Shown in pieces: positions 13,628 through 27,508 of a stretch of DNA of 45,841 nucleotides (the first letter of the stretch is position 1; the number at the start of each line of letters is the position of its first letter). Origin of the DNA: Fonticula alba ATCC 38817. Taxonomy: Eukaryota > Protista > Nucleariida. Location of the stretch: NCBI GenBank assembly GCA_000388065.2, contig KB932203.1, one strand, 5' to 3'. The notes beneath the pieces are model-generated. The model did no database searches, was not told the DNA's origin, and worked only from the letters and a program-made list of their open reading frames with translations. The position numbers and the translations under genes were made by a program.

Positions 13628-13699
13628 TGGGGACTAGAGGGATCGAACCACTGACCGCTCGATCTGGAGTCGAGTGCTCTACCACTGAGCTAAGCCCCC
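13628..13699 (-). tRNA. tRNA-Trp(CCA)
   Basis: Acceptor GGGGGCT/AGTCCCC, anticodon arm CTCGA-CTCCAGA-TCGAG, GGTTCGATCC T-arm, downstream TTGTTTTT terminator. Confidence 0.96.
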
Positions 13700-13731
13700 G
13701 AGGTTGTGGTGGTTAAAAGGAAAGGGACTCA

Positions 13732-13874
13732 ATAAAACTCTCGGGTTGCCCCACCCGGAGGGTGGCACCGACGGTTGCCTGCCCGGGAATGGTGGGCGTG
13801 TCCCGCCGCCCCCTCCTCGGGAAGTAGCAGCTGTGTGTGGATGAGGCGTTCTTTTCCTGCACACAGAGTTTTAT
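13732..13874. ncRNA. Candidate structured RNA or MITE-like element closed by a perfect 10-bp inverted repeat (ATAAAACTCT/AGAGTTTTAT)
   Basis: AT-rich terminal stem, internal hairpins CCACCC-GGA-GGGTGG and CTGTGTG...CACACAG. No family recognised. Confidence 0.3.
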
Positions 13875-13943
13875 CAGGCACATCAGCCGCTGGGAAGGGA
13901 GGCTCACTTCAAATATTTCTCGTGCACAAGAGTATATGGGCAG

Positions 13944-14267
13944 AAAAAAAGGAGGACGAGGCGGGAGACACACGACCATCCGTCAGGCAAGAGGAAGCAC
14001 GGCGAAGCATAATCCCCTTCCGCCAGCCTGGGAGGGTGCAAGCGGGGATTCCCACCGCCGCCGGGTGGCCGGCCCGGCTGCCGCGCCCCGAGAGAGGGGG
14101 CGACAGCGCCTCTCGCAGCGCGCCGTCGGCATCTGCCCCGGGTCGGATCACGCGCCGACGTGTGACCCCCGTTCTGGTACTACACCGGCTTCTGGTGGGC
14201 GTCCGTCTGGTGCCACCTCTCGGCCGGGTGTGGCCCACGCCCGTTCCACATATGCCATTGTCGGATG
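13944..14267 (-). ncRNA. Candidate ~300-nt structured Pol III RNA divergent from tRNA-Gln
   Basis: End pairing CATCCG/CGGATG, perfect 5-7 bp stems (GGGCGT/ACGCCC, CGTCGGC/GCCGACG, CGCCCC/GGGGCG, CCACC/GGTGG, AATCCCC/GGGGATT), T7 at the minus-strand 3' end. Confidence 0.25.
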
Positions 14268-14283
14268 CCCTGGGACGTAGAGC

Positions 14284-14355
14284 GGTTGAGTGGTGTAATG
14301 GTTATCACGGCAGACTCTGAATCTGTCAATCCGAGTTCGATTCTCGGCTCGACCT
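14284..14355 (+). tRNA. tRNA-Gln(CTG)
   Basis: Acceptor GGTTGAG/CTCGACC, anticodon loop CTCTGAA, GAGTTCGATTCTC T-arm. Confidence 0.96.
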
Positions 14356-14433
14356 TCATTTTGTGCCTTCTGATGCTGGATCGAAGGTCCTTCTCTTTAA
14401 ATAATCCTCCTTCGGCCCGTTCTTCTACCCTGC

Positions 14434-14505
14434 GTGGATATCGTATAGTGGTTAGTATAAGTGGTTGTGGCCCACTCGGCCCCAGTTCGATTCTGGGTAT
14501 CCACA
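14434..14505 (+). tRNA. tRNA-His(GTG); G-1 not encoded, A discriminator
   Basis: Acceptor GTGGATA/TATCCAC, anticodon arm AGTGG-TTGTGGC-CCACT, followed by TTATTTTT. Confidence 0.96.
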
Positions 14506-14625
14506 CATTATTTTTGGCCTATGTCCGCAGGCCGTCCTTTTTTTCTTCCGTCTTGTCCTCCTCCGGCGCACCGACCACCGCCGGCAAACGACCACCACCG
14601 GCAAACGACCACCCATGCACGTGTG

Positions 14626-14627
<2 letters not shown>

Positions 14628-14656
<29 letters not shown>

Positions 14657-14658
14657 AT

Positions 14659-14693
<35 letters not shown>
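14628..14693 (+). repeat. G homopolymer (29 G, AT, 35 G)
   Basis: Read directly. Length is unreliable in a draft assembly. Confidence 0.85.
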
Positions 14694-14894
14694 CGAAAAA
14701 ATCGCGACAAGTAACCATGCAGAGGGGGGGAGTGTATTTGCTCTCCTTTCCTCCAGGCAGGGAGCAGGAGAGAGAGAGAGAGAGAGGGAGGGAGAGAGAC
14801 ACTCCGCCGGGGGACAGGTGCAGCATCTGCACACACGGGGCGGAAGGGCACACGCACAGACGCCGAAGGGCGGGAGGGGGGAGGGGGGGGGGAC

Positions 14895-17800
14895 TTACTC
14901 CTGGTCAGCCAGGCGGAACTCGCTGATCATCTCCACCAAATACATCATGGAGATGGAGTCCGAGCGAGCACGCTCAGAGGCTTCGACCACCGCATGATGG
15001 ACCTTGGAGCGCTGGTCGCTCGGCACACCACCCAGGTAGCCCTATCGTGCCGGTGTAGCAACCGGACGGGCATGCGCCCGCATGTTCCACAGATGGGCGT
15101 GTGCGTGTTTGTATCCGAGTCCACACACATTGTTCCCGATGTCACACACACAGACACAGGCAAAGAGACATTCCTCCTGTCAGACAAAGCCCCAACCATG
15201 CACAAAGACAGCCAAAACACCCCCTCCCCCCGCGCCAAGGGCCCCCGCCCCCCAAACATCGCACGCACCTCGAACAGACGCTCAAAGCGAGAGCGATCCT
15301 CCAGCAGAGCACGCGACACGCGCGGCACGCAGAACGCCTCGCGGAAGGCCTCCCGCAGCTTCATGGTCCGAAGGAAGTCCCCATCATTGCTGGTGCACAG
15401 GAGCATGACCTTGTGGCCATTCGGCGGAACGGCCCGCATGGCCGACCGCAGCCGCACCAGCACCGGGTTCGAGTACACCGGCGCGCAGCCCTCCGGCCGG
15501 GAGTACTCCAGCAGGAGCTCCAGCTTGGAGATGATGACAATCGACACCGGCGACCGGTATGCATCCAGCAGGGTGTTCGTGATGGCAGCCAGCTTCTCGC
15601 TGGTGTTCTGCAACGTCGGCGACGTCGGATCGATGATGCGCACAAACTTCACCGCCGACTGCAGGGCATGGTGCACGGCGGTGGTCGTGCAGCCGACACC
15701 CTCCGCATCGCCATGCAGCAGCAGCGGCACCGTCGCACCGCCCGGGGTGCCCAGCAGCCGGCGAATGCGCTGGGCAAAGTGCTCCCCAAAGAAGGTCCCA
15801 TCGCCCAGAGGCAAATCCACAAAGCCCGGCGTGCGATACAGCTGCAGGCGATCATCCCGGCCGAAGGTCGAGGCAATGCCCGCCAGCCCCCGGAGGAGAT
15901 CCGCCTGGGTGATGGCGAAGCCATCCAGGCTGGCCGGGTCGAAGACCGCCGCCCCGCCCTCCTCCGAGGCCGGGGTGAACAGACGCTCCGAGGCATTGGT
16001 GAAGCCCCGCCGGACCAAGCTCGCCAGCTCCGCACCGCTGAAGTTCTCCGTCAGCGCCGCCAGCCGGGCGATGTCCACATCCGGCGCCAGGCCCCCGGAC
16101 TCCACATACGGCCGGAGGTGGATGCGCAGGATTTCCATCCGGCCAGCCTCATCCGGCAGCGGGATTTCCACCTGGATGTCAAAGCGCCCGGGGCGCAGCA
16201 TGGCCGTGTCCAGCAGGTCAATGCGGTTCGTCATGGCAATGATCAGGATGTTGTTCAGCTGCCCGACACCGTCCAGCATGGTCAGCAGCTGATTGACGAT
16301 GTTGGCCCCGACGCCGGTCGAGTCGGACGACCCGCTGGACCGGGACTTGGCCAGCGCGTCGAACTCATCGAAGATGACCACATGCAGACGCGCATCCTCG
16401 CCATACGTCTTCTGGTCCTCGATCGCCGGCTCGAACAGCTGCCGGACATTCTTCTCCGATTCACCGACATACTTGGACAGCAAATCCGGGCCTGGTGTCA
16501 GCCCGGCAAAGGATTACATGCGCGGTGCGCGGTGCGCGGTGCATGGTGCATGGTGCATGGTGCATGGTGCATGGTGCATGGTGTACGGTGTACAGTGTAC
16601 GGCGCACATGGTGCAAGATACACGGCGCACGACGCACAGGCACAGCACACAGCACAGAATACACAGCACACAGCACAGAATACACAGCACACAGCACAGA
16701 ATACACAGCACACAGCACAGAATACACAGCACACAGCACAGAATACACAGCACATAACACAAAGCACACAGCACACAATACAAAGCACACAACACACAAC
16801 ACACAACACACAGCATACAGCACACAGCACACGGCACACACCACGGCCACCAAGAGACAGCATCAGTGAGTCCCCCGGACCCCAGGGAATGAGGATAATC
16901 TCTTCAGTTAATAGCCAGCTTACCGCCACATGTGCAAACTCACCCCTCAACATCGGCGGGCACGTCCCGGGCACTGCCCAGCCACCCGCATGCGCACGCA
17001 CCATTCACAATCTTCACATCGTGCGCCTTGATGTACTGGGAGATGACACGCGCGATCAGCGTCTTACCGGTACCCGGCGGCCCGTGCAGGATGATGCCTC
17101 GCGAGTGCTGGATGCCGAACTTCTTGATGACCGACGTCGGCAGCATGCGCGTCGTCAACGCATGCCGGCGGATGGTATCCAGAATGTCATCCAGACCACC
17201 GATGCCCAGGTTGTAGCCGGTCATGCTGACCTTGCTGTCGAAGGCCTCGCGCTGGGGCGCATTTGTCAGGATGATCTTCGGGTTGTCCGAGATAAACACC
17301 AGCCGGGTGGCGGTCGCCATGCCGGCCCGCGGCGTGGCCACCAGAACACCGGACACGCCATCCTGATCGCCCTTCACATTGACCGCGTCGATGTTCAGCT
17401 TCAGCAGGTTCCCCTGGAAATGGAACACCTTCATCTGCAGGGTGACAGCAGCCACCAGGCCGGGAGCCAGGCGCCAGCGGGAGATGCCACGGAAGCCGGG
17501 TCAGTCCAAAGCCATCCAAAGCCACCACGCGGCCGGGCACGAAAAAGGAGACGCACCTCCTGCGACGTGTGGGCCACCTCGGCGAAATGGTTACGGTAGG
17601 CCTCCTCCAGCTCGCGGTGGTCGAACATGCGGTCGCGCTCGGCCGCGCGCTTGTTGGACTGCTGCGCCACGATGTCCAGCTGCGGTGCATGCCCGGGCGC
17701 AGGGGAGAGTGTAAGAGGCGAGGAGGGGAGGAGAAAGCACCAAAGAATGACAGGGCCCGCCTCGGCCCCCGGCCCGGAAGCCAAAGAGCACCGGCCAAGG

Positions 17801-18302
17801 CCCCGAGGCACGGACGTACGCGGAAGGTGATCGACACCATGGCCGGCGGCTCGGTGACAAACTCCAGCGTCACCGGGTCCCGCTGGTCCGCCGGAAAGAA
17901 GCTCCGGTGCGAATTACCGGCACCGATCTGGCCGCTGGACAGGGTGGACGAGGTGTCCCTGCGGGGAGGAGGTTATGGAAGCGGGGCATACGGCGCACAA
18001 GGAGTCAGCCCATGCGGCGGGGAGAGGGGCGGCCCGCACAAAGGCCGACACCCCGAGGGGCGGAAAGGGAGCGGGCCAGGGGGAACACCGGGCCGGGCCG
18101 GATCGTACGACAGTGAAAAGAAGATCGGCTTGTCGCTGACGGTGTTGGTCTTCAGCATGAGGTGGCGCGACGGGAAGGTCGGCATGTCGACCGGCGACGC
18201 GAGCAGGCACCCGGGCAGGGCCTGCTCGATGGTCATCAACTTCTCCATGGTGAAGTTCCGCCGCTGGGGCCCGTGGGCCAGGACAACATACTGCTTCAGC
18301 AT
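14895..18302 (-). CDS. NSF: Divergent NSF/Sec18 vesicle-fusing AAA+ ATPase; exons 18302-18109, 17958-17820, 17679-17557, 17434-17002, 16491-15269, 15041-14895
   Basis: N domain, D1 GIGGLD...GPPGTGKT...KYVGESE...FDEFDA...TNRIDLLDTAMLRPGRF, and an alignable D2. All five introns are GT-AG and preserve frame. Start assumed at gccATG next to a gap. Confidence 0.92.
16521..16840 (+). repeat. Intronic compound repeat: 7-mers (GCGCGGT, GCATGGT)n then a 21-mer (CACAGCACACAGCACAGAATA) about 5 copies with a degenerate tail
   Basis: Lies within NSF intron 16492-17001. Confidence 0.9.
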
Positions 18303-19174
18303 GGCGGGNNNNNNNNNNNNNNNNNNNNNNNNNNNNNNNNNNNNNNNNNNNNNNNNNNNNNNNNNNNNNNNNNNNNNNNNNNNNNNNNNNNNNNNNNNNN
18401 NNNNNNNNNNNNNNNNNNNNNNNNNNNNNNNNNNNNNNNNNNNNNNNNNNNNNNNNNNNNNNNNNNNNNNNNNNNNNNNNNNNNNNNNNNNNNNNNNNNN
18501 NNNNNNNNNNNNNNNNNNNNNNNNNNNNNNNNNNNNNNNNNNNNNNNNNNNNNNNNNNNNNNNNNNNNNNNNNNNNNNNNNNNNNNNNNNNNNNNNNNNN
18601 NNNNNNNNNNNNNNNNNNNNNNNNNNNNNNNNNNNNGGAGGGAGGAGGGAGGAGGGAGGAGGGAGGAGGGGAGGGCGAAGGCAGGGCGAAGAGGGGAGAT
18701 GCCCGGGCTGAGGTCGGCGCGAGGCTCACCGCAGGGTCTTTTCTCGTCCCCCGGCCAGGGCGCCTCAGTCGAGAGGGGGCGGCGCGCCGATGCCCGGGGG
18801 GGGACCGGGACACTCTTCACTTAGACACACTCCGCCGGGCCCGCCCCCGCCCCAGTCAACACTGGCGCGTCCGCCCCCCGCCCTTCTCTCTCTCTCTCTC
18901 GCTCGGCTGGGCGGGCTTCTTCGGGCCCCGCACCCTTGGGAAGGGGCAGGTGCCAACGTTGCGGATCCGGCGCCGACAGACTCCCGCCCACGGCCCAAGG
19001 CCCCCCCTCTGCCCCGCGCTGGACGGGCTCTCCTCGCGCGCCCGACAAGAAGGCCAAGGTGCCGGGGGCAGGTTGTTTTCTTTTCGCCCCGGTCTTTGGC
19101 CGGGTCTCTCCGGCGCTGCCCTCCTGCCGGACACCGGTCGGGCAGACTGTGCAACGGGCCAAAAAGGAAAGTTC

Positions 19175-19248
19175 TGTCCGAACCAGGACTCGAACCTGGG
19201 ACATTCTGTGTGTTAGACAGATATGATAACCATCTACATCATTCGGAC
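19175..19248 (-). tRNA. tRNA-Val(AAC)
   Basis: Acceptor GTCCGAA/TTCGGAC, anticodon arm TCTGT-CTAACAC-ACAGA, GGTTCGAGTCC, downstream TTTTT. Confidence 0.96.
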
Positions 19249-19391
19249 ACAAGGAGGACCGGCCTCCCGGCACCTAAGTACTACCAGCATCTGCTTTACC
19301 AGTACCCCCCCGCACTCACCCCGCCCAGACGCCCGAGCGAGAAAAAGCAGGTGACCTAAAATGCATTCCCCCTCGTGCCTGTCCATGAGCA

Positions 19392-19470
19392 GGTTGGATG
19401 GCCGAGTGGTTAAGGCGCCAGTTTAAGGCACTGGTGGGAAACCGCGTGGGTTCGAGTCCCACTCCAATCA
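19392..19470 (+). tRNA. tRNA-Leu(AAG), type II variable arm
   Basis: Acceptor GGTTGGA/TCCAATC, anticodon arm CCAGT-TTAAGGC-ACTGG, GGTTCGAGTCC. Confidence 0.96.
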
Positions 19471-19547
19471 CACTTTTGCCCCTTGTCACGCGCCTGGCCA
19501 CCAGCCGCCAGCTTCTTATGGCCACATGCCTCCCCATAGGATACGAC

Positions 19548-19620
19548 TCCCATATAGTCTAGGTGGTTAGGATACGTGGCTCTCACCCACGAGACCCGGG
19601 TTCGAGTCCCGGTATGGGAA
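19548..19620 (+). tRNA. tRNA-Glu(CTC)
   Basis: Acceptor TCCCATA/TATGGGA, anticodon arm CGTGG-CTCTCAC-CCACG, followed by TTTCTTTTT. Confidence 0.96.
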
Positions 19621-19667: not shown

Positions 19668-20888
19668 GAAAAGGACAAGGTCCCAGGACTTGCCCACCCA
19701 CGCCCGCCTGGGTGTGTGGCAGTTGTTCCCCCCACCGCGCCCCTCTCGGCTCGCTCATTGTGCGGATTGGGGGGGGGGGGGGGGCCTGGCNNNNNNNNNN
19801 NNNNNNNNNNNNNNNNNNNNNNNNNNNNNNNNNNNNNNNNNNNNNNNNNNNNNNNNNNNNNNNNNNNNNNNNNNNNNNNNNNNNNNNNNNNNNNNNNNNN
19901 NNNNNNNNNNNNNNNNNNNNNNNNNNNNNNNNNNNNNNNNNNNNNNNNNNNNNNNNNNNNNNNNNNNNNNNNNNNNNNNNNNNNNNNNNNNNNNNNNNNN
20001 NNNNNNNNNNNNNNNNNNNNNNNNNNNNNNNNNNNNNNNNNNNNNNNNNNNNNNNNNNNNNNNNNNNNNNNNNNNNNNNNNNNNNNNNNNNNNNNNNNNN
20101 NNNNNNNNNNNNNNNNNNNNNNNNNNNNNNNNNNNNNNNNNNNNNNNNNNNNNNNNNNNNNNNNNNNNNNNNNNNNNNNNNNNNNNNNNNNNNNNNNNNN
20201 NNNNNNNNNNNNNNNNNNNNNNNNNNNNNNNNNNNNNNNNNNNNNNNNNNNNNNNNNNNNNNNNNNNNNNNNNNNNNNNNNNNNNNNNNNNNNNNNNNNN
20301 NNNNNNNNNNNNNNNNNNNNNNNNNNNNNNNNNNNNNNNNNNNNNNNNNNNNNNNNNNNNNNNNNNNNNNNNNNNNNNNNNNNNNNNNNNNNNNNNNNNN
20401 NNNNNNNNNNNNNNNNNNNNNNNNNNNNNNNNNNNNNNNNNNNNNNNNNNNNNNNNNNNNNNNNNNNNNNNNNNNNNNNNNNNNNNNNNNNNNNNNNNNN
20501 NNNNNNNNNNNNNNNNNNNNNNNNNNNNNNNNNNNNNNNNNNNNNNNNNNNNNNNNNNNNNNNNNNNNNNNNNNNNNNNNNNNNNNNNNNNNNNNNNNNN
20601 NNNNNNNNNNNNNNNNNNNNNNNNNNNNNNNNNNNNNNNNNNNNNNNNNNNNNNGAAAAGGACAAGGTCCCAGGACTTGCCCACCCACCCCGCCTGGGTG
20701 TGTGGCAGTTGTTCCCCCCACCGCGCCCCTCTCGGCTCGCTCATTGTGCGGATTGGGGGGGGGGGGGGGGGCCTGGCGCCCCCCCCCCCCCCCCCCCCCC
20801 CCCGCCGGGGGGTGGGGGGTTTTTTCCCCCCCCCCCCCCCCCCCCGGCCCCTCATTGTGCGGATTGGGGGGGGGGGGGGGGGCCTGGC
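19668..20888 (+). repeat. ~122-bp G-run-containing repeat on both sides of the gap 19791-20654, plus a partial third copy at about 20850-20888
   Basis: GAAAAGGACAAGGTCCCAGG...CTCATTGTGCGGATT(G)nCCTGGC. The copies differ slightly (CACGCCCGCC vs CACCCCGCC). Confidence 0.8.
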
Positions 20889-21239
20889 TGATGCCCCCCC
20901 CCCCCCTCCCGGCCGGAACGGTGGCTTGATCGCAGCCGCCAGCGCACCGGACCCGGCCGCCCCGCAGGCCCGGGGTTCCCCACAGCTCGGCGGCCGGCGC
21001 GGAGAGCCCGCCGGAGGGGGAGGGAGAAACCACACTCAAGCGCGATCGTCATGTGGGCATCCTTTTTTTTTTGTTTTTGCGCTCGGGTTTGTCGGCGGGA
21101 TCTGCTGCTCCGTTATCTTGCTCGTGTTGCACACTTCGCTGTCCCCCAATTTCCTTTTCCCGTGCTCCCTGTTGCCTTCCTTTCTGTCTTTTGTTCCGCG
21201 CGCCCCGCCGGGACACGCCCTCACCACCACACCGCCACC

Positions 21240-23913
21240 ATGGCCGAGGTGTCCGGAGCGAGGCCCACCGCGGCGCAGGCATCCCGCGCCGACCGGCCGG
21301 CCCCGCGCCGGCCCCCTCCCCGGCCGTCGACCGGCGTGCTGCTGCTCCAGGAGCGCCAGCAGCGCCAGCTGGATGTGGCCGGCCGCGCGGCCGCCCTCTC
21401 GGCCGCCCTCCGCCGTCGCGCCCAGTACATCCTCCTCCTGCCGGTCAGCCCCCTGGCCGAGGCGTCCCCGGCGCCCGACGCGCGTCAGCGCGCTCGCCAC
21501 GTCTGGCACCTGGCCCGCCAGCGCGGCCTCATCCACGGCCGGTGGGCCTCCCTCGCCGGCGATGCGCGGGCCCCAACCGCTCACGACCCCGAGCCCCGGG
21601 CCCCGGCGCCGTATGTCGTCTCCTCCGAGGCCCGCGAGCACTGCCTCATCGCCGCCCCCGGGGCCGCCAGCGATCCCGACTGGCGGTGCATCCACCAGGA
21701 CATCGGCCCGGCCTCGCCGGAGCCGGCCCCCGACTCGGCAGCCTGTCCGGCCCCCGGGCCCGATGCCATCGAGGCTGCCGCGCACCGGCTGCTCGACCAG
21801 CTGCCCGACCCGAGCACCGCCCTCCTGGTGCTGGTGGTCTGTGACTGCCATGCGTGTGCTGCCCCCGCCGACGACCCTCCCCCCAGGCCACCGGGCTGCC
21901 CCTTCGCCCGGCCAGACCAGCTCCTCCGGCTGTACGGCATCCTCAAGCGTGCGGTCGAGTGGTGGCCACATGTGGACATCCTCCTCTCCGGTGCGAACGC
22001 CCTCCTTTCTGCTCTCGCTCCCTCTTTCTGGTGTGCTCCTGTCGGCTCCTTGCACCGGGCAGCCCTCCCTGACATGGCATGCCCCCCCCCCCCCCCCCCC
22101 CCCCCCCNNNNNNNNNNNNNNNNNNNNNNNNNNNNNNNNNNNNNNNNNNNNNNNNNNNNNNNNNNNNNNNNNNNNNNNNNNNNNNNNNNNNNNNNNNNNN
22201 NNNNNNNNNNNNNNNNNNNNNNNNNNNNNNNNNNNNNNNNNNNNNNNNNNNNNNNNNNNNNNNNNNNNNNNNNNNNNNNNNNNNNNNNNNNNNNNNNNNN
22301 NNNNNNNNNNNNNNNNNNNNNNNNNNNNNNNNNNNNNNNNNNNNNNNNNNNNNNNNNNNNNNNNNNNNNNNNNNNNNNNNNNNNNNNNNNNNNNNNNNNN
22401 NNNNNNNNNNNNNNNNNNNNNNNNNNNNNNNNNNNNNNNNNNNNNNNNNNNNNNNNNNNNNNNNNNCCTCTGGCAGGAGATCTTCCGCTGCCGTGTGGCC
22501 CCGCCCCTGGCAGCCGCGGCGACCCGCCCCGGCCTCTGGATCCCGCGGCTGGCCCTCTGGCAGGGCCCCCTGCTCTTTGGGGACTCCCCCCACCCGGCCC
22601 TTTGTGCGCTCGCATCCTGTCGCCGGCATGCCCCCCGCCCTATTTCTTCCTCACCAATCGACGGCCTCCCCGCCCGCCCCCTCGCCCCTGCCTGTCCCAT
22701 CCATCGTAGTTGCCCGATGCACGGCCCGGTCGCCCGAGGCGTATCATCTTGGCCGCGCGTGGATGCACAGCCCGCTGCCCATGTGCCCGGCCACGGGGGC
22801 CCCCGCGCCCCAGCGCGCCGGCCTCTTCCGCCACGACTTGCGCATCGATCTCGACGCCTCGGGCAGTGAGCCGTCCCTCGCCAACGCCGCCATCCCCCTG
22901 GCCGACGTCCCTCTCCAGGCCCTGACCGGCCTTTCCTTCGACCTGTACATGCCCTCTCGGCCCCTGGCCTTTGTTTTTCTTTCCCCCCTCGCTTCAGTCC
23001 CCTCGAAATGTGTCTCACCCCCCCCCGCCCCCCTCCCCCTCTATAGTGTTATCCAGGCAGATGACCGCCTGGCCGGGGGGCGCCTGCTGGCATCGCTGGT
23101 CGCCGATCCGCGCCTCGGCCAGAGCACCGGCCTCCTGGCGTCGATGGTCCTCACGCCGGCCCGGGCCTTTTCCCGGAGCGCCGACTGGCCGGGCTACATC
23201 CTCCGGCCGCACCTGGCCGGGGCCCAGGCCAGCCGGCACCCGTCGGCCCCCCTCGCCGGGGCCCCGATCCACGCCGTGGCGCACTTCCTCCTGGTGGTCG
23301 CGCCGGACCCCCGGCGGCCCCCGGCCAGCGCCCCGGGGCAGCTGCACTTTTCCCTGCACCTGCTCGCGGCCCCGGGCAATGCGCCCTCTGCCGACCCGGT
23401 GCCCGCGGTGGAGATCCCCGCCTCCGGGCTCGGCATGTGGGACCCCCGGCGGGCCTTCGTCAGCGGGGCCGCCGGCTTCGCCGATTGGTCCCTGGCCGCC
23501 AGCTTGCAAAAGGTCCCCCGCCAGGCCGGCCGGCCGCCCCCCCCGGCTGCCTGTTCCCCCCCCCTGGTTTTGGATTACTCGGCCTTCAAGGCCCCCGGCG
23601 GGCCGCTGGTCACTGGCCCCATGCTCGCGGCCTTCCGCGCCACGGCCGACCTCCAGGCCGCCGAAGCCCACGAGCTGCCCCCTTCACACCCATACTGCCC
23701 GCCGCCGCCGCCGCCGCCGCCGCCGCGTCACCTGTCCAATGGCACCCCGGCCGACGTGCGCTTCGAGTCGGCCGGGCTCATCATCCCCTGCCTGACGGCC
23801 GGGGCCCTGCTCGGCCGTGTGCATCACCGCGAGTGGCGTCTCCGCCGCGAGCTCGCCCGCCGCACCGACCCCGTGCGCATGACCCCTCCGCCCCCTCCCC
23901 CGATCGCCGACGC

Positions 23914-23979
<66 letters not shown>

Positions 23980-25518
23980 CCCCCCTAACCTGTCCGGGTC
24001 CCAGTCCGCCCATCGACACTTGGACGAGCAGCTGGCCGATGCTCGCGGCCACCCGACGCCCGTCCTGGTCTCGGGCCCGGCTTCCGCGGCCTCGGAGCGC
24101 CCCCGGCCGCCCTTCCACCTGCCGACCCCGGCCGTCACCCCCTCCACCACCCGGCCCGCCCCATACGTCAGCCAGCTTGTTTCACAGGACGTCCTCGTGC
24201 ACCCGGGGCTCACCCCGCAGCAGGGTATGCATCCCTCCTCGGCCCCTCCTCGCCATGCCCTCCCTCTGCCCTGTGCCCGGTTCATCTCTCTTTCTCTCTC
24301 CCCCCCCCCTCTCTCTCTCTCTCGCGGCGTGCTGACTCACTCCCCCTCCCCGCTTTCTTGCTGCCTCTCCCCCTTTCGCCAGGTTTGGGCTCCTCTTGGG
24401 AGGACTGGCGCGCGCGGCTGGTCCTCGCGGCCAAGCTCTCGGCCCCAGCCCCACCGCACGCCGTCGGCGGCCCCGCCACGGCCCCGGCCCTGGCCTCGGC
24501 CCTGCCCCTGCCCAGCCTGCTGGTGGATCCACTCCTCCCGCCGTACAGCCCCCATCAAACCCTCGGGCTGGAGCCCTCCACCGACTGCCAAGAGCGCGAT
24601 GCGGACTTCCGGCGCATCTGCCAGGCGCACCTGGCCGACGAATTCGCCTCATTGCATGAGCCGCCTCGCCAGGCGGCCGGCCTGCCGACGGACCCCCTCC
24701 TGGCCGAGATGCTCGCGTGCCTCCATACCCCGATCACCAGTCCCCCCTCGGTGGCCAGTCCTGATGATGTGCCGGCCTCTCGGTCGCCCTGCCCGCCGGG
24801 GGACCTTCCTGCCTCGCCCTCCTCGGACCCCAGGCTGGCCCTGGGCATATCCCTGCCCCGGTCCGACTCGCCGCCCTCCTCCTTCGGCGTGGGTCCTCCC
24901 CCGGGGCGGGAGGCGATGCCGCCGCCCGTGCCGCCCCCCGTGCCGCCGCCCTCGGCTGCCCCCCGGCCCCGACGCCCGGCCCCGGGCAAGGCCCTTGCCC
25001 GCAACAAGACCGTGCGCCCTCTACACGCCCATGCTCCAAGCCCCGCCGCCCCACGTGCGCCCATTGTGTGGTGCATTTTCTGATCCCCTTCCCCCCCCCC
25101 TCCCCTGCTCGATGCCCCAAGGCAATCAAGGTGGCCATCACCCGGCTCCTGGCTCGGCATGGCGTGGCCTCCGGACACTCGCTCCTGGACACCCTCCGGC
25201 GCTTGCTCTACAAGCGGTCGACGCTGCTCCTGGTGCGCCGCCCCCCCCCCCTATGTGCCTTGCCACAAGGCCCCCCGTCCCCCTGCTTTGTCCCCCATCC
25301 TGCCGATAACCTAACGCGAGGAGCGCCGCTCTGTGCAGGCTGCCGAGCTCCGCAAGGACGCGCCCATTTCCAAAGTTCACATTGAGGCCATGCTCGAGTT
25401 GGATGAACCCCTCGTCGAGCGCATGCTGGCCACAGGCGGCGCCGCGGGGCCCGATGATCCGGATCCCCACGCCGCGGATGCCAGCCCACCATCCTCCCCT
25501 CGGGCCGATTGCCGATAG
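21240..25518 (+). CDS. MTBP: Probable MTBP/Sld7-family replication origin-firing factor, multi-exon, one gap inside
   Basis: Ordered matches to recalled human MTBP: QYILLLP~RYLLLV, RHVWHLARQR~ANVYHLLKRS, DWRCIHQD~DWQEIHFD, AAHRLLDQLPDPSTALL~AENLHQLSDKLPAPGRAMV, LYGILKRAVEWW~TVGALKHLREWY, LWQGPL~LWRGKI, IPLADVP~IKLSDLP, and a C-terminal AIKVAITRLLARHGV~ILKEVVTETLKKHSI. Clear GT-AG introns at 23873-24004, 24224-24382, 25012-25121, 25233-25338. Confidence 0.72.
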
Positions 25519-27508
25519 CCGGCCGTGAGGGTGCCCCGCCTCTCCCCCACGCTCCCCCTGGCAATAGCCAGCCTGCCAACCGGCGTTCTTGGCAGCCCCC
25601 ATGCGGCGTGCCCTCCCCTCTTGCATCCTGTGCCGCCGGCTGGTCGAAAGTGCCATGTCCCTCCTTTCGCGCGAGCGCGCCCGTCCAATCCTTTCTCTCC
25701 TCGGCAGACCAGCGCCCGAGTGGGGAGCTGGGGAACTTTCCGGACCCCCACCCCCCCCCCCCCCCCCCCCCCCCGGGTGTCCAAGCCAGAGGGGCGACAT
25801 GCAGACACACATACAAACAGCATGGCAACAATACAGGGCCGGTGATCGGGTTTGGCGAGCTCCCGGGGCACATTGTGGGCGCGGTCCGTCGCGCAGCCAC
25901 AAAGGGGAGGTTAACTCAGATGGGATTCTGGTCCGGGCAGATCAGCACGCGTGAAGTATAGGAGAATGGAGCATGATGGTATGTCAGAACCCCGAGGAAG
26001 ATCACGGGCTGTGGAGGAGCCGCAACAACGCGCCCCCCAGAGCCCACAACCAAGTGAGTGCACTTCGCCACTCGCTCTGAAGACGGCCCCCGGGTGTACA
26101 TGCTATTGGCCACACTCCTATCTTCCAGCGCCTTTCCACCGCTCGAGACAGCCCCCCCACCCGCAGTGCTCGCCAGCCGGGGTTGAACCACCGCCGGTGC
26201 CCCACCCCCGGGGACGTTCGTGTCCCCTCGCCAGACATCCCGCATTGTTGCGGCCAATCGCAAGGGGAAGTCCGCGCCCCTCACCCGGGAGAAGGCTCAG
26301 CGCCGGAGCCCAGTTGAGACAACCGGCCACTGTTCGGGTCCAGGTGTGTTGTGCTATCTCCCCCCCCCTCTCCCCATCCCCAGCTCATCTTTCAGCACCG
26401 GCCCTGGCACACGGATTCGGCCAGCAGTCAGCGGGCTATGCCGGTCACTGCCAGCCATTCGCCATCTCCGCGATGCCGCCCTGGCCTGCCGGGCCGGCCA
26501 ACCGTTGCCTTTCCCGCGAAGACAGCCCCTCTCTCGCCCGGTCGGAATGTCTCGCGCCCGCTGGGCCCACGCGCCGGACACGACTCCCGCCTTGGGAGCC
26601 GGAGTCCTGAGGCGTGTCACATCACATGACAGCCCAAGCACCAAGCTCCCTCCATGCGTCACGATGACCGAGGGCGCGCATCACGCGCGGTCCATCGGCA
26701 GCAGTGGGGCCGACTGCGCTCCTAAGATCCGGGATCACGCCACCGCGGACATTCGTTGGACACTTGCAACCGATCCGGGCCCCTTTTGGTTGCAGAGCCG
26801 ACCCGCCCCGGCAGGCGAGCACCTCATCCCGCGGCCGGGCCCGCCGCACGGGACGGCCTCGCGCCGCGGCCTGCGCGGCAGCAGGGACAAGTGTGACGGA
26901 GATCTCCGGCGCATGTTTGGATGTTGCGCTGGCCCGCCTCCCGGGCCGGAGCGGAGGGACATGCATTCCCGGGCCTCGGGGGGGCGGCTGGAAAAGCCCG
27001 GAGCGGCCGGCGGTCTCGCGCACCCTCGGCTAACACGGCCGGGNNNNNNNNNNNNNNNNNNNNNNNNNNNNNNNNNNNNNNNNNNNNNNNNNNNNNNNNN
27101 NNNNNNNNNNNNNNNNNNNNNNNNNNNNNNNNNNNNNNNNNNNNNNNNNNNNNNNNNNNNNNNNNNNNNNNNNNNNNNNNNNNNNNNNNNNNNNNNNNNN
27201 NNNNNNNNNNNNNNNNNNNNNNNNNNNNNNNNNNNNNNNNNNNNNNNNNNNNNNNNNNNNNNNNNNNNNNNCCCCCGACCGCCGTTCCGCCCTCCCCCTC
27301 CCTTCCCCTCTCCTTTGTCGCTGCCAAGAGGTGATCCGTGACATTGATTGTACGCGCTCCCACCGACGCTCCCCCCCCCATTCTCCCATCGTCTTTTCCA
27401 TGTGCCTCCCTGCTCACCGCCCCTCCTCGCCCCTGGGTCTCTCGCCCGGCGCATTCCGGCCCCCCGCTCAGGCCACGTGTCTGCGCCGCCCCTCGCTCCC
27501 TCAGTGAC

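What the first reader, a model, noticed from the sequence alone, without database searches (positions are those of the whole stretch)
21240..25518. Full-length, animal-type MTBP in what looks like a non-animal (probably fungal-side) protist
Seen: seven ordered N-terminal/middle motif matches plus a C-terminal helical segment matching MTBP as I recall it. Known: MTBP partners Treslin/TICRR in origin firing and is the counterpart of yeast Sld7, which shares the C-terminal module but lacks the N-terminal vWA-like domain. Inference: if the host is a holomycotan, the long form is ancestral in opisthokonts and Sld7 arose by truncation. This gene would likely be auto-annotated as hypothetical.
Basis: partly seen in the sequence, partly recalled or inferred. 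Interest (0 to 1): 0.7.

Follow-up and report, generated by a model that had tools for sequence, protein, structure and literature searches.

The report
Probable Sld7/MTBP replication-factor gene
This slime-mould (Fonticula alba) gene, filed as 'hypothetical', probably encodes its version of a known DNA-replication start factor (Sld7/MTBP), recognisable only by the predicted shape of its tail; that it is a complete animal-type version is not shown.

Summary
The gene is real. It has 8 exons at 21240-25518 (+) and equals Fonticula alba H696_01822, annotated 'hypothetical protein'. Public cDNA-like contigs show five of its seven splice joints. They also bridge the assembly gap in frame: the gap hides the end of intron 1 plus 22 exon letters, so the deposited 1013-aa model lacks 23 residues (true length about 1036 aa).

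No sequence method sees MTBP. Pfam found no MTBP_N, MTBP_mid, MTBP_C or Sld7 match for the whole protein or 14 pieces. PDB phmmer found nothing. An exhaustive phmmer over 1.84 billion proteins found only the protein itself.

The last ~75 residues do point to Sld7/MTBP, by four routes:
- Language-model features rank an MTBP_C cluster first and an Sld7_C cluster second.
- A three-helix AlphaFold model has an Sld7_C cluster as its best match in the ESM Atlas.
- Foldseek ranks the Sld7 C-terminal domain (3X38) first in the PDB.
- An exhaustive structural alignment ranks 3X38 first (Z 8.9, 73 of 78 residues).

My reading is a probable, very divergent Sld7/MTBP orthologue. The N-terminal vWA domain, Ku-like barrel and animal middle domain are unproven, because the model there was unusable (pLDDT 34). 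The 'long form is ancestral' inference therefore stays open.

The parts
21240..21990 (+). Exon 1 (ATG at 21240; ends with 1 base of a split codon). Encodes residues 1-250, an Ala/Pro-rich region with alternating predicted helices and strands. Its fold is unassigned.
   Evidence: Exact substring of P0001 residues 1-250. Donor G|GTGCGA at 21991. Contig X3 record 10 ends its first block at 21990. No Pfam or PDB match.
21991..22466 (+). Intron 1 (5' part, ending in a poly-C run) plus the assembly gap 22108-22466. The gap also hides the first 22 letters of exon 2.
   Evidence: tables 5 and 5c: joint 21990 -> 22467 with 22 letters between them, in one contig of depth 4.1.
22467..22603 (+). Visible part of exon 2. 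The deposited model starts it only at 22514, and so lacks 23 residues.
   Evidence: Contig X3 record 10 covers 22467-22545. Frame shown. The annotated protein reads ...VDILLS|AAATRPGLW. Donor T|GTGCGC at 22604 is inferred and agrees with the NCBI model.
22710..22944 (+). Exon 3.
   Evidence: Whole codons are an exact substring of P0001 residues 282-358. Contig X3 record 11 ends at 22944. The acceptor at 22709|22710 is inferred and agrees with the NCBI model.
23047..23872 (+). Exon 4a. It holds the beta-rich stretch (P0001 ~320-443 spans exons 3 and 4a) that is the only candidate for a Sld3/Treslin-binding barrel. This is unproven.
   Evidence: Exact substring of P0001 residues 360-634. Secondary structure comes from a low-confidence model. 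No fold match.
23873..24004 (+). Intron 4: 132 nt, GT..AG, in frame and free of stops. It contains a ~60-nt poly-C run that would read as poly-proline if retained.
   Evidence: Joint 23872 -> 24005 in contig X3 record 13. Absent from P0001.
24005..24224 (+). Exon 4b.
   Evidence: P0001 residues 635-707.
24383..25011 (+). Exon 5: a Pro/Ser-rich, probably disordered linker. Its last 7 codons (24991-25011) begin the C-terminal domain.
   Evidence: Joints 24224 -> 24383 and 25011 -> 25122 seen in contigs. P0001 residues 709-917. Composition.
25122..25232 (+). Exon 6: helix 1 and the first part of helix 2 of the Sld7/MTBP-type C-terminal domain (S7M-C).
   Evidence: P0001 residues 918-954. Three-helix model. 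Best structural match is Sld7 C-terminal domain 3X38 and an Sld7_C cluster. Feature search ranks MTBP_C and Sld7_C top.
25339..25518 (+). Exon 7: rest of helix 2 and helix 3 of the S7M-C domain (to about 25431), a short acidic/Pro-rich tail, and the stop codon at 25516-25518.
   Evidence: Joint 25232 -> 25339 in two contigs. P0001 residues 955-1013..

Best explanation
The gene encodes the Fonticula alba member of the Sld7/MTBP family of replication origin-firing factors. It is so divergent and compositionally skewed (Ala 16.5%, Pro 15.8%) that only its C-terminal domain can still be recognised, and only by fold. Shown here: a transcribed, spliced gene of about 1036 codons whose last ~75 ordered residues are predicted to form a three-helix domain that best matches the Sld7 dimerisation domain. 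Inferred from what is established for yeast Sld7 and animal MTBP (PMC6377148, PMC8807876, PMC13572456): this C-terminal domain pairs two copies of the protein. A part of the long N-terminal region, most likely the beta-rich stretch around residues 320-443, binds the Sld3/Treslin partner. The resulting 2:2 complex brings Cdc45 to phosphorylated MCM double hexamers. The Pro/Ser-rich middle would be a flexible, possibly phosphorylated linker.
For: (1): language-model feature search of residues 900-1000 against representatives of 7.7 million clusters ranks an MTBP_C (PF14920) cluster first (0.83, 188 of 256 features) and an Sld7_C (PF18596) cluster second (0.78). These are the two families the hypothesis named in advance, and the literature holds them to be homologous. 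(2): AlphaFold single-sequence model of residues 900-1000 gives three helices (P0001 908-929, 936-958, 966-986), as reported for S7M-C in PMC6377148. (3): shape search of the ESM Atlas puts an Sld7_C cluster first (TM 0.58, 77 residues, rmsd 2.8). (4): Foldseek ranks 3x38_D (Sld7 C-terminal domain) first of 350,542 PDB chains, with 3x38_B and 3x38_A also listed. (5): exhaustive VIA alignment to 48,161 chains ranks 3x38_A first, Z 8.9, rmsd 2.5 A, 73 of 78 target residues. It is the only chain with Z >= 8; the next is 7.0. (6) The domain sits at the extreme C-terminus behind a long disordered region, as in MTBP and Sld7. PMC6377148 states that the two Sld7/MTBP domains occur in no other protein. 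(7) The gene is expressed and spliced.
Against: No sequence statistic supports it. Pfam MTBP_N, MTBP_mid, MTBP_C, Sld7_N and Sld7_C gave no hit at E <= 10 on the whole protein or on 14 pieces. PDB phmmer gave nothing. Exhaustive phmmer found only the protein itself. Each structural or feature score is weak on its own: feature score 0.83 is below the tool's 0.9 'lead only' line, and only 2 of the ten best family hits agree; Foldseek E is 2.5; the model's pLDDT is 60; the tool warns that Z below about 13 can be a common arrangement for helical bundles. Routes 3-5 share one model. The N-terminal Sld3/Treslin-binding barrel, which the family also requires, was not demonstrated. No Sld3/Treslin partner was sought in this genome.
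Confidence: 0.7

Rival explanations
1. [quoted passage not shown] This would make the long form ancestral to opisthokonts and fungal Sld7 a truncation.
For: Length (about 1036 aa) is close to human MTBP (904 aa by PMC8807876 figure legends) and far from yeast Sld7, whose 3X38 chain ends at residue 257. The low-confidence model shows alternating helix/strand elements in residues 46-240, then a strand-rich stretch at 320-443, the order expected for vWA then barrel. The S7M-C-like end is supported. From memory only, and untested, some short stretches resemble human MTBP.
Against: No Pfam MTBP_N or MTBP_mid hit at E <= 10. The feature search of residues 1-360 gave no usable hit. The N-terminal model has pLDDT 34, and its fold searches return only generic alpha/beta pieces, best Z 5.1, with no Ku, vWA or 3X37. 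The one citable Treslin-contact motif matches at chance level. Much of the length is Pro/Ala-rich low complexity, so length alone says little. Basidiomycete Sld7_C proteins of 411 aa exist.
Confidence: 0.15
2. A lineage-specific orphan protein unrelated to Sld7/MTBP. Its C-terminal three-helix segment resembles the Sld7 domain only because short helical bundles are common.
For: No relatives at all by phmmer in 1.84 billion representatives or by word search. No Pfam family. Every individual C-terminal score is below the usual significance lines (notes).
Against: Four searches, using two kinds of information and four libraries, each put the pre-specified family first among 48 thousand to 7.7 million alternatives. 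The match covers 73 of 78 residues of 3X38 and stands about 2 Z units above the next row. By contrast, the same searches with the N-terminal model gave no such target.
Confidence: 0.15

Closest known systems
Saccharomyces cerevisiae Sld7 (C-terminal dimerisation domain, PDB 3X38; Pfam Sld7_C PF18596)
   Same: A terminal three-helix domain. It is the best structural match to the model of P0001 911-985 (Z 8.9, rmsd 2.5 A, 73 of 78 residues; Foldseek rank 1). An Sld7_C cluster is top in the Atlas shape search and second in the feature search.
   Different: Sequence identity is only 11-14%, and there is no HMM match. The F. alba protein is about four times longer. Its N-terminal Sld3-binding barrel and an MCM-binding helix (PMC13572456) were not identified.
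Animal MTBP (Mdm2-binding protein; Pfam MTBP_N PF14918, MTBP_mid PF14919, MTBP_C PF14920)
   Same: Similar overall length. Ordered N-terminal half, disordered Pro/Ser-rich middle and a small helical C-terminal domain. An MTBP_C cluster is the top feature-search hit for residues 900-1000.
   Different: None of the three MTBP Pfam models matches. The vWA domain, Ku-like barrel and Cdk8/19-cyclin C-binding region described in PMC8807876 and PMC6377148 were not demonstrated here.
Treslin/TICRR-Sld3 pair (loss of the vWA-containing CIT domain in fungi)
   Different: For Treslin the argument rests on plant and animal sequences with a demonstrated vWA domain. For this protein no vWA domain has been shown.

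Membership tests
Sld7/MTBP family | S7M-C: a three-helix domain at the extreme C-terminus (the Sld7 dimerisation domain fold, PDB 3X38) | tested here: met
   Three helices predicted. 3X38 is rank 1 by Foldseek and by exhaustive VIA alignment (Z 8.9, 73 of 78 residues). An Sld7_C cluster is top in the Atlas shape search. The model is of middling confidence (pLDDT 60).
Sld7/MTBP family | Significant sequence-profile match to Sld7_C (PF18596) or MTBP_C (PF14920) | tested here: not met
   No hit at E <= 10 for the whole protein or for pieces 900-1000 and 910-990. Only a language-model feature resemblance was found. A profile-profile test could not be run because no family sequences were available by reference.
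Sld7/MTBP family | S7M-N: an N-terminal Ku70-like beta-barrel that binds Sld3/Treslin | tested here: inconclusive
   The single-sequence model of residues 1-620 has pLDDT 34. Fold searches on it are uninformative. Pfam and PDB gave nothing. The human 306-316 contact motif matches at chance level.
Sld7/MTBP family | Physical binding to Sld3/Treslin, self-association, and a requirement for origin firing | not testable with these tools
   Needs biochemistry or genetics. An F. alba Sld3/Treslin was not searched for, because no query sequence was available by reference.
Animal-type MTBP | N-terminal vWA domain (human residues 1-236, PMC8807876) / Pfam MTBP_N | tested here: inconclusive
   Pfam MTBP_N found no hit. 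Feature search of residues 1-360 gave no usable hit. The structure model is unusable. The helix/strand alternation in residues 46-240 is compatible with a vWA fold but not diagnostic.
Animal-type MTBP | Middle region with the Cdk8/19-cyclin C-binding domain (human 595-704, PMC6377148) / Pfam MTBP_mid | tested here: not met
   No MTBP_mid hit at E <= 10 on the whole protein or on pieces 580-800 and 690-830. The corresponding part is Pro/Ser-rich low complexity.

The most novel reading that the evidence does not exclude
Fonticula alba keeps a long Sld7/MTBP with a vWA domain and Ku-like barrel in front of S7M-C. The opisthokont ancestor would then have had the long, Ku-like architecture, and the vWA domain would have been lost inside Fungi after they split from nucleariids, in parallel with loss of the vWA-containing CIT from Sld3.
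Probability: 0.35. Interest if true: 0.5.

Novelty: new member of a known kind. Interest (0 to 1): 0.35.

Why it matters
Sld7/MTBP was the last core origin-firing factor to be linked between yeast and animals. That link needed remote-homology methods, and the papers read here compare only animal and fungal sequences. I found no paper naming Fonticula together with Sld7 or MTBP. A probable orthologue in a nucleariid, the sister lineage of fungi, gives a data point between the 257-residue yeast form and the roughly 900-residue animal form. Once its N-terminal half is modelled with a real alignment, it could show when the vWA domain and the middle region were gained or lost. On the practical side, the gene is mis-annotated in two ways: it is called hypothetical, and its model lacks 23 residues because of an assembly gap. 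The case also shows that F. alba's extreme composition hides orthologues from HMM searches.

Tried and rejected
- **Pfam scans.** Seven exon translations, the whole database protein and seven further pieces gave no MTBP, Sld7, Ku or vWA family. Only chance-level DUF819 and DUF3782 hits appeared.
- **PDB sequence search.** The whole protein and three pieces gave nothing at E <= 10.
- **Word-index search.** The stop-free genomic ORF 22712-25309 (region 1-505) found only the F. alba protein itself.
- **Exhaustive phmmer.** Against 1.84 billion representatives it found only the protein itself. No alignment could therefore be built for folding or profile comparison.
- **AlphaFold on residues 1-620 without an alignment.** pLDDT was 34. 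Foldseek and VIA searches with that model returned generic alpha/beta fragments, best Z 5.1. I treat these as uninformative, not as evidence against a vWA domain or barrel.
- **Human MTBP 306-316 motif taken from PMC6377148.** The best match was at chance level.
- **Literature.** No paper holds Fonticula with Sld7 or MTBP, nor MTBP + Sld7 + Arabidopsis, nor Sld7 + Sld3 + LECA. A broader protist search returned nothing relevant. The supplement of PMC6377148 holds no alignment as text.
- **Neighbouring ORFs.** Pfam on ten long ORFs gave nothing. In this 70% GC genome, long ORFs occur in all frames.
- I did not build my own joined 1036-aa protein. I made no comparison with human MTBP or yeast Sld7 sequences recalled from memory (no reference). 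I ran no further search on the C-terminal piece, judging the odds of shared 5-residue words too low.
Full report
**What is there**

The window is about 70% G+C with nine assembly gaps. Reading 21000-25800 and the frames gives a gene on the + strand, with ATG at 21240 and TAG at 25516-25518. The word-index search with the stop-free genomic ORF 22712-25309 returned one protein, P0001. This is NCBI 'hypothetical protein H696_01822 [Fonticula alba]', 1013 aa, with no precomputed Pfam domain.

Seven exon translations are exact substrings of P0001. The protein is encoded at 21240-25518 of scaffold KB932203.1 of assembly GCA_000388065.2. Fonticula alba belongs to Opisthokonta, order Rotosphaerida.

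**Gene model, gap and expression**

Four small public runs of one 2012 study, kept as contigs, were laid on 21000-25800. They are only guessed to be RNA, but their contigs skip five GT..AG intervals, so they derive from spliced transcripts. The joints are:
- 21990 -> 22467
- 23872 -> 24005
- 24224 -> 24383
- 25011 -> 25122
- 25232 -> 25339

The model is as follows:

| Exon | Coordinates |
|---|---|
| E1 | 21240-21990 |
| E2 | 22 hidden letters + 22467-22603 |
| E3 | 22710-22944 |
| E4a | 23047-23872 |
| E4b | 24005-24224 |
| E5 | 24383-25011 |
| E6 | 25122-25232 |
| E7 | 25339-25518 |

This sums to 3111 nt, or 1036 codons plus the stop. The E2/E3 and E3/E4a joints are inferred and agree with the NCBI model.

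The interval 23873-24004 is an in-frame, stop-free intron carrying a long poly-C run. Read as an ORF it would look like a poly-proline tract.

The gap was tested as the scan's program asked. Contig X3 record 10 joins 21990 to 22467 with 22 letters that are not in the window. Then 1 (left from E1) + 22 + 1 (position 22467) = 24 = 8 codons, and reading resumes at 22468 in the open frame LWQEIFRCRV.... The two sides are therefore continuous in the mRNA and in frame. The annotators could not see into the gap and used a later AG (exon start 22514), so P0001 lacks 23 residues. This rests on one contig of depth 4.

**Is it MTBP by sequence? No method says so**

- Pfam at E <= 10 finds no MTBP_N, MTBP_mid, MTBP_C, Sld7_N, Sld7_C, Ku or vWA model. 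This holds exon by exon, on P0001 as a whole and on seven further pieces.
- phmmer against all PDB sequences finds nothing at E <= 10.
- phmmer against 1.84 billion cluster representatives finds only the protein itself.
- The protein is 16.5% Ala, 15.8% Pro, 12% Leu and 8.5% Arg. That composition lowers the power of such searches.
- The only stretch of human MTBP I could take from a source rather than memory is residues 306-316, spelled out in PMC6377148. Its best match is NAAIPLADVPL at residue 339, with a score that 73% of shuffles reach.

**The C-terminus nevertheless points to Sld7/MTBP**

- The language-model feature search of residues 900-1000 ranked an MTBP_C cluster first (0.83) and an Sld7_C cluster second (0.78) among representatives of 7.7 million clusters. 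The tool calls hits under 0.9 leads only.
- AlphaFold without an alignment folds residues 900-1000 into three helices, with pLDDT 60. This matches the three-helix bundle reported for S7M-C (PMC6377148).
- With that model, the Atlas shape search lists an Sld7_C cluster first.
- The exhaustive VIA alignment to 48,161 chains lists 3x38_A first, with Z 8.9, rmsd 2.5 A and 73 of 78 residues. It is the only chain with Z >= 8; the next is 7.0.

None of these scores would convince alone, and the last three share one model. But the target family was named before any search. It came first in four rankings that use two kinds of information, which chance does not plausibly explain. The same searches run on the N-terminal model produced no such target. 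PMC6377148 states that the Sld7/MTBP domains occur in no other protein. I therefore file the gene, at about 0.7, as a very divergent Sld7/MTBP-family member.

**What is not shown**

By PMC8807876, human MTBP consists of:
- a vWA domain (residues 1-236);
- a Ku70-like barrel (237-420) that binds Treslin;
- a middle region with the Cdk8/19-cyclin C site (595-704; PMC6377148);
- S7M-C at the C-terminus.

Sld7 has the barrel and S7M-C only. For the F. alba protein, the N-terminal 620 residues fold at pLDDT 34, and no alignment can be built. The low-confidence secondary structure (helix/strand alternation in 46-240, strands in 320-443) is compatible with vWA plus barrel but proves nothing. The 'animal-type, full-length' label and the claim that Sld7 arose by truncation therefore remain open. 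The analogous claim for Treslin/Sld3 is already published (PMC8807876).

**Likely mechanism (inferred from the family, not shown here)**

- The C-terminal domain dimerises the protein.
- An N-terminal barrel binds Sld3/Treslin.
- The 2:2 complex is recruited to DDK-phosphorylated MCM double hexamers and delivers Cdc45 (PMC13572456; PMC9219753).

I also did not compare with MTBP or Sld7 sequences from memory.

**Verdict**

The gene is real and expressed. The gap is bridged in frame. The gene is probably a new, highly divergent member of a known family.

Noticed in passing
window 13628-19620: Six tRNA genes (Trp, Gln, His, Val, Leu, Glu) lie on both strands within 6 kb, just upstream of the gene. 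The last one (Glu, 19548-19620) abuts the gap 19791-20654.
   Followed up: no
window 22467-22513 and gap 22108-22466: The deposited gene model H696_01822 lacks 23 residues. The true start of exon 2 lies inside the assembly gap, and a cDNA-like contig supplies 22 letters that the assembly does not have.
   Followed up: yes
window 22082-22107, 23918-23980, 25746-25775: There are long poly-C runs. One abuts the gap at 22108 and is a possible cause of the assembly break. One sits in an in-frame intron that would read as poly-proline if retained.
   Followed up: partly
window 21991, 22604, 23873, 25012, 25233: Five of the seven intron donors share the unusual extended form GTGCG(C/A), which may be a species-typical 5' splice-site consensus.
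   Followed up: no
window 14895-18302 (-), from L001 3656-7063: The upstream neighbour is a 752-aa AAA ATPase (Pfam AAA and AAA_lid_3 in the collection's precomputed hits). The three downstream called genes have no Pfam family.
   Followed up: no
window 23518-23538 and 25088-25105: Much more abundant contigs of all four runs share 18-21-letter matches here and then run on as unrelated sequence. These are probably short GC-rich motifs shared with highly expressed transcripts.
   Followed up: no
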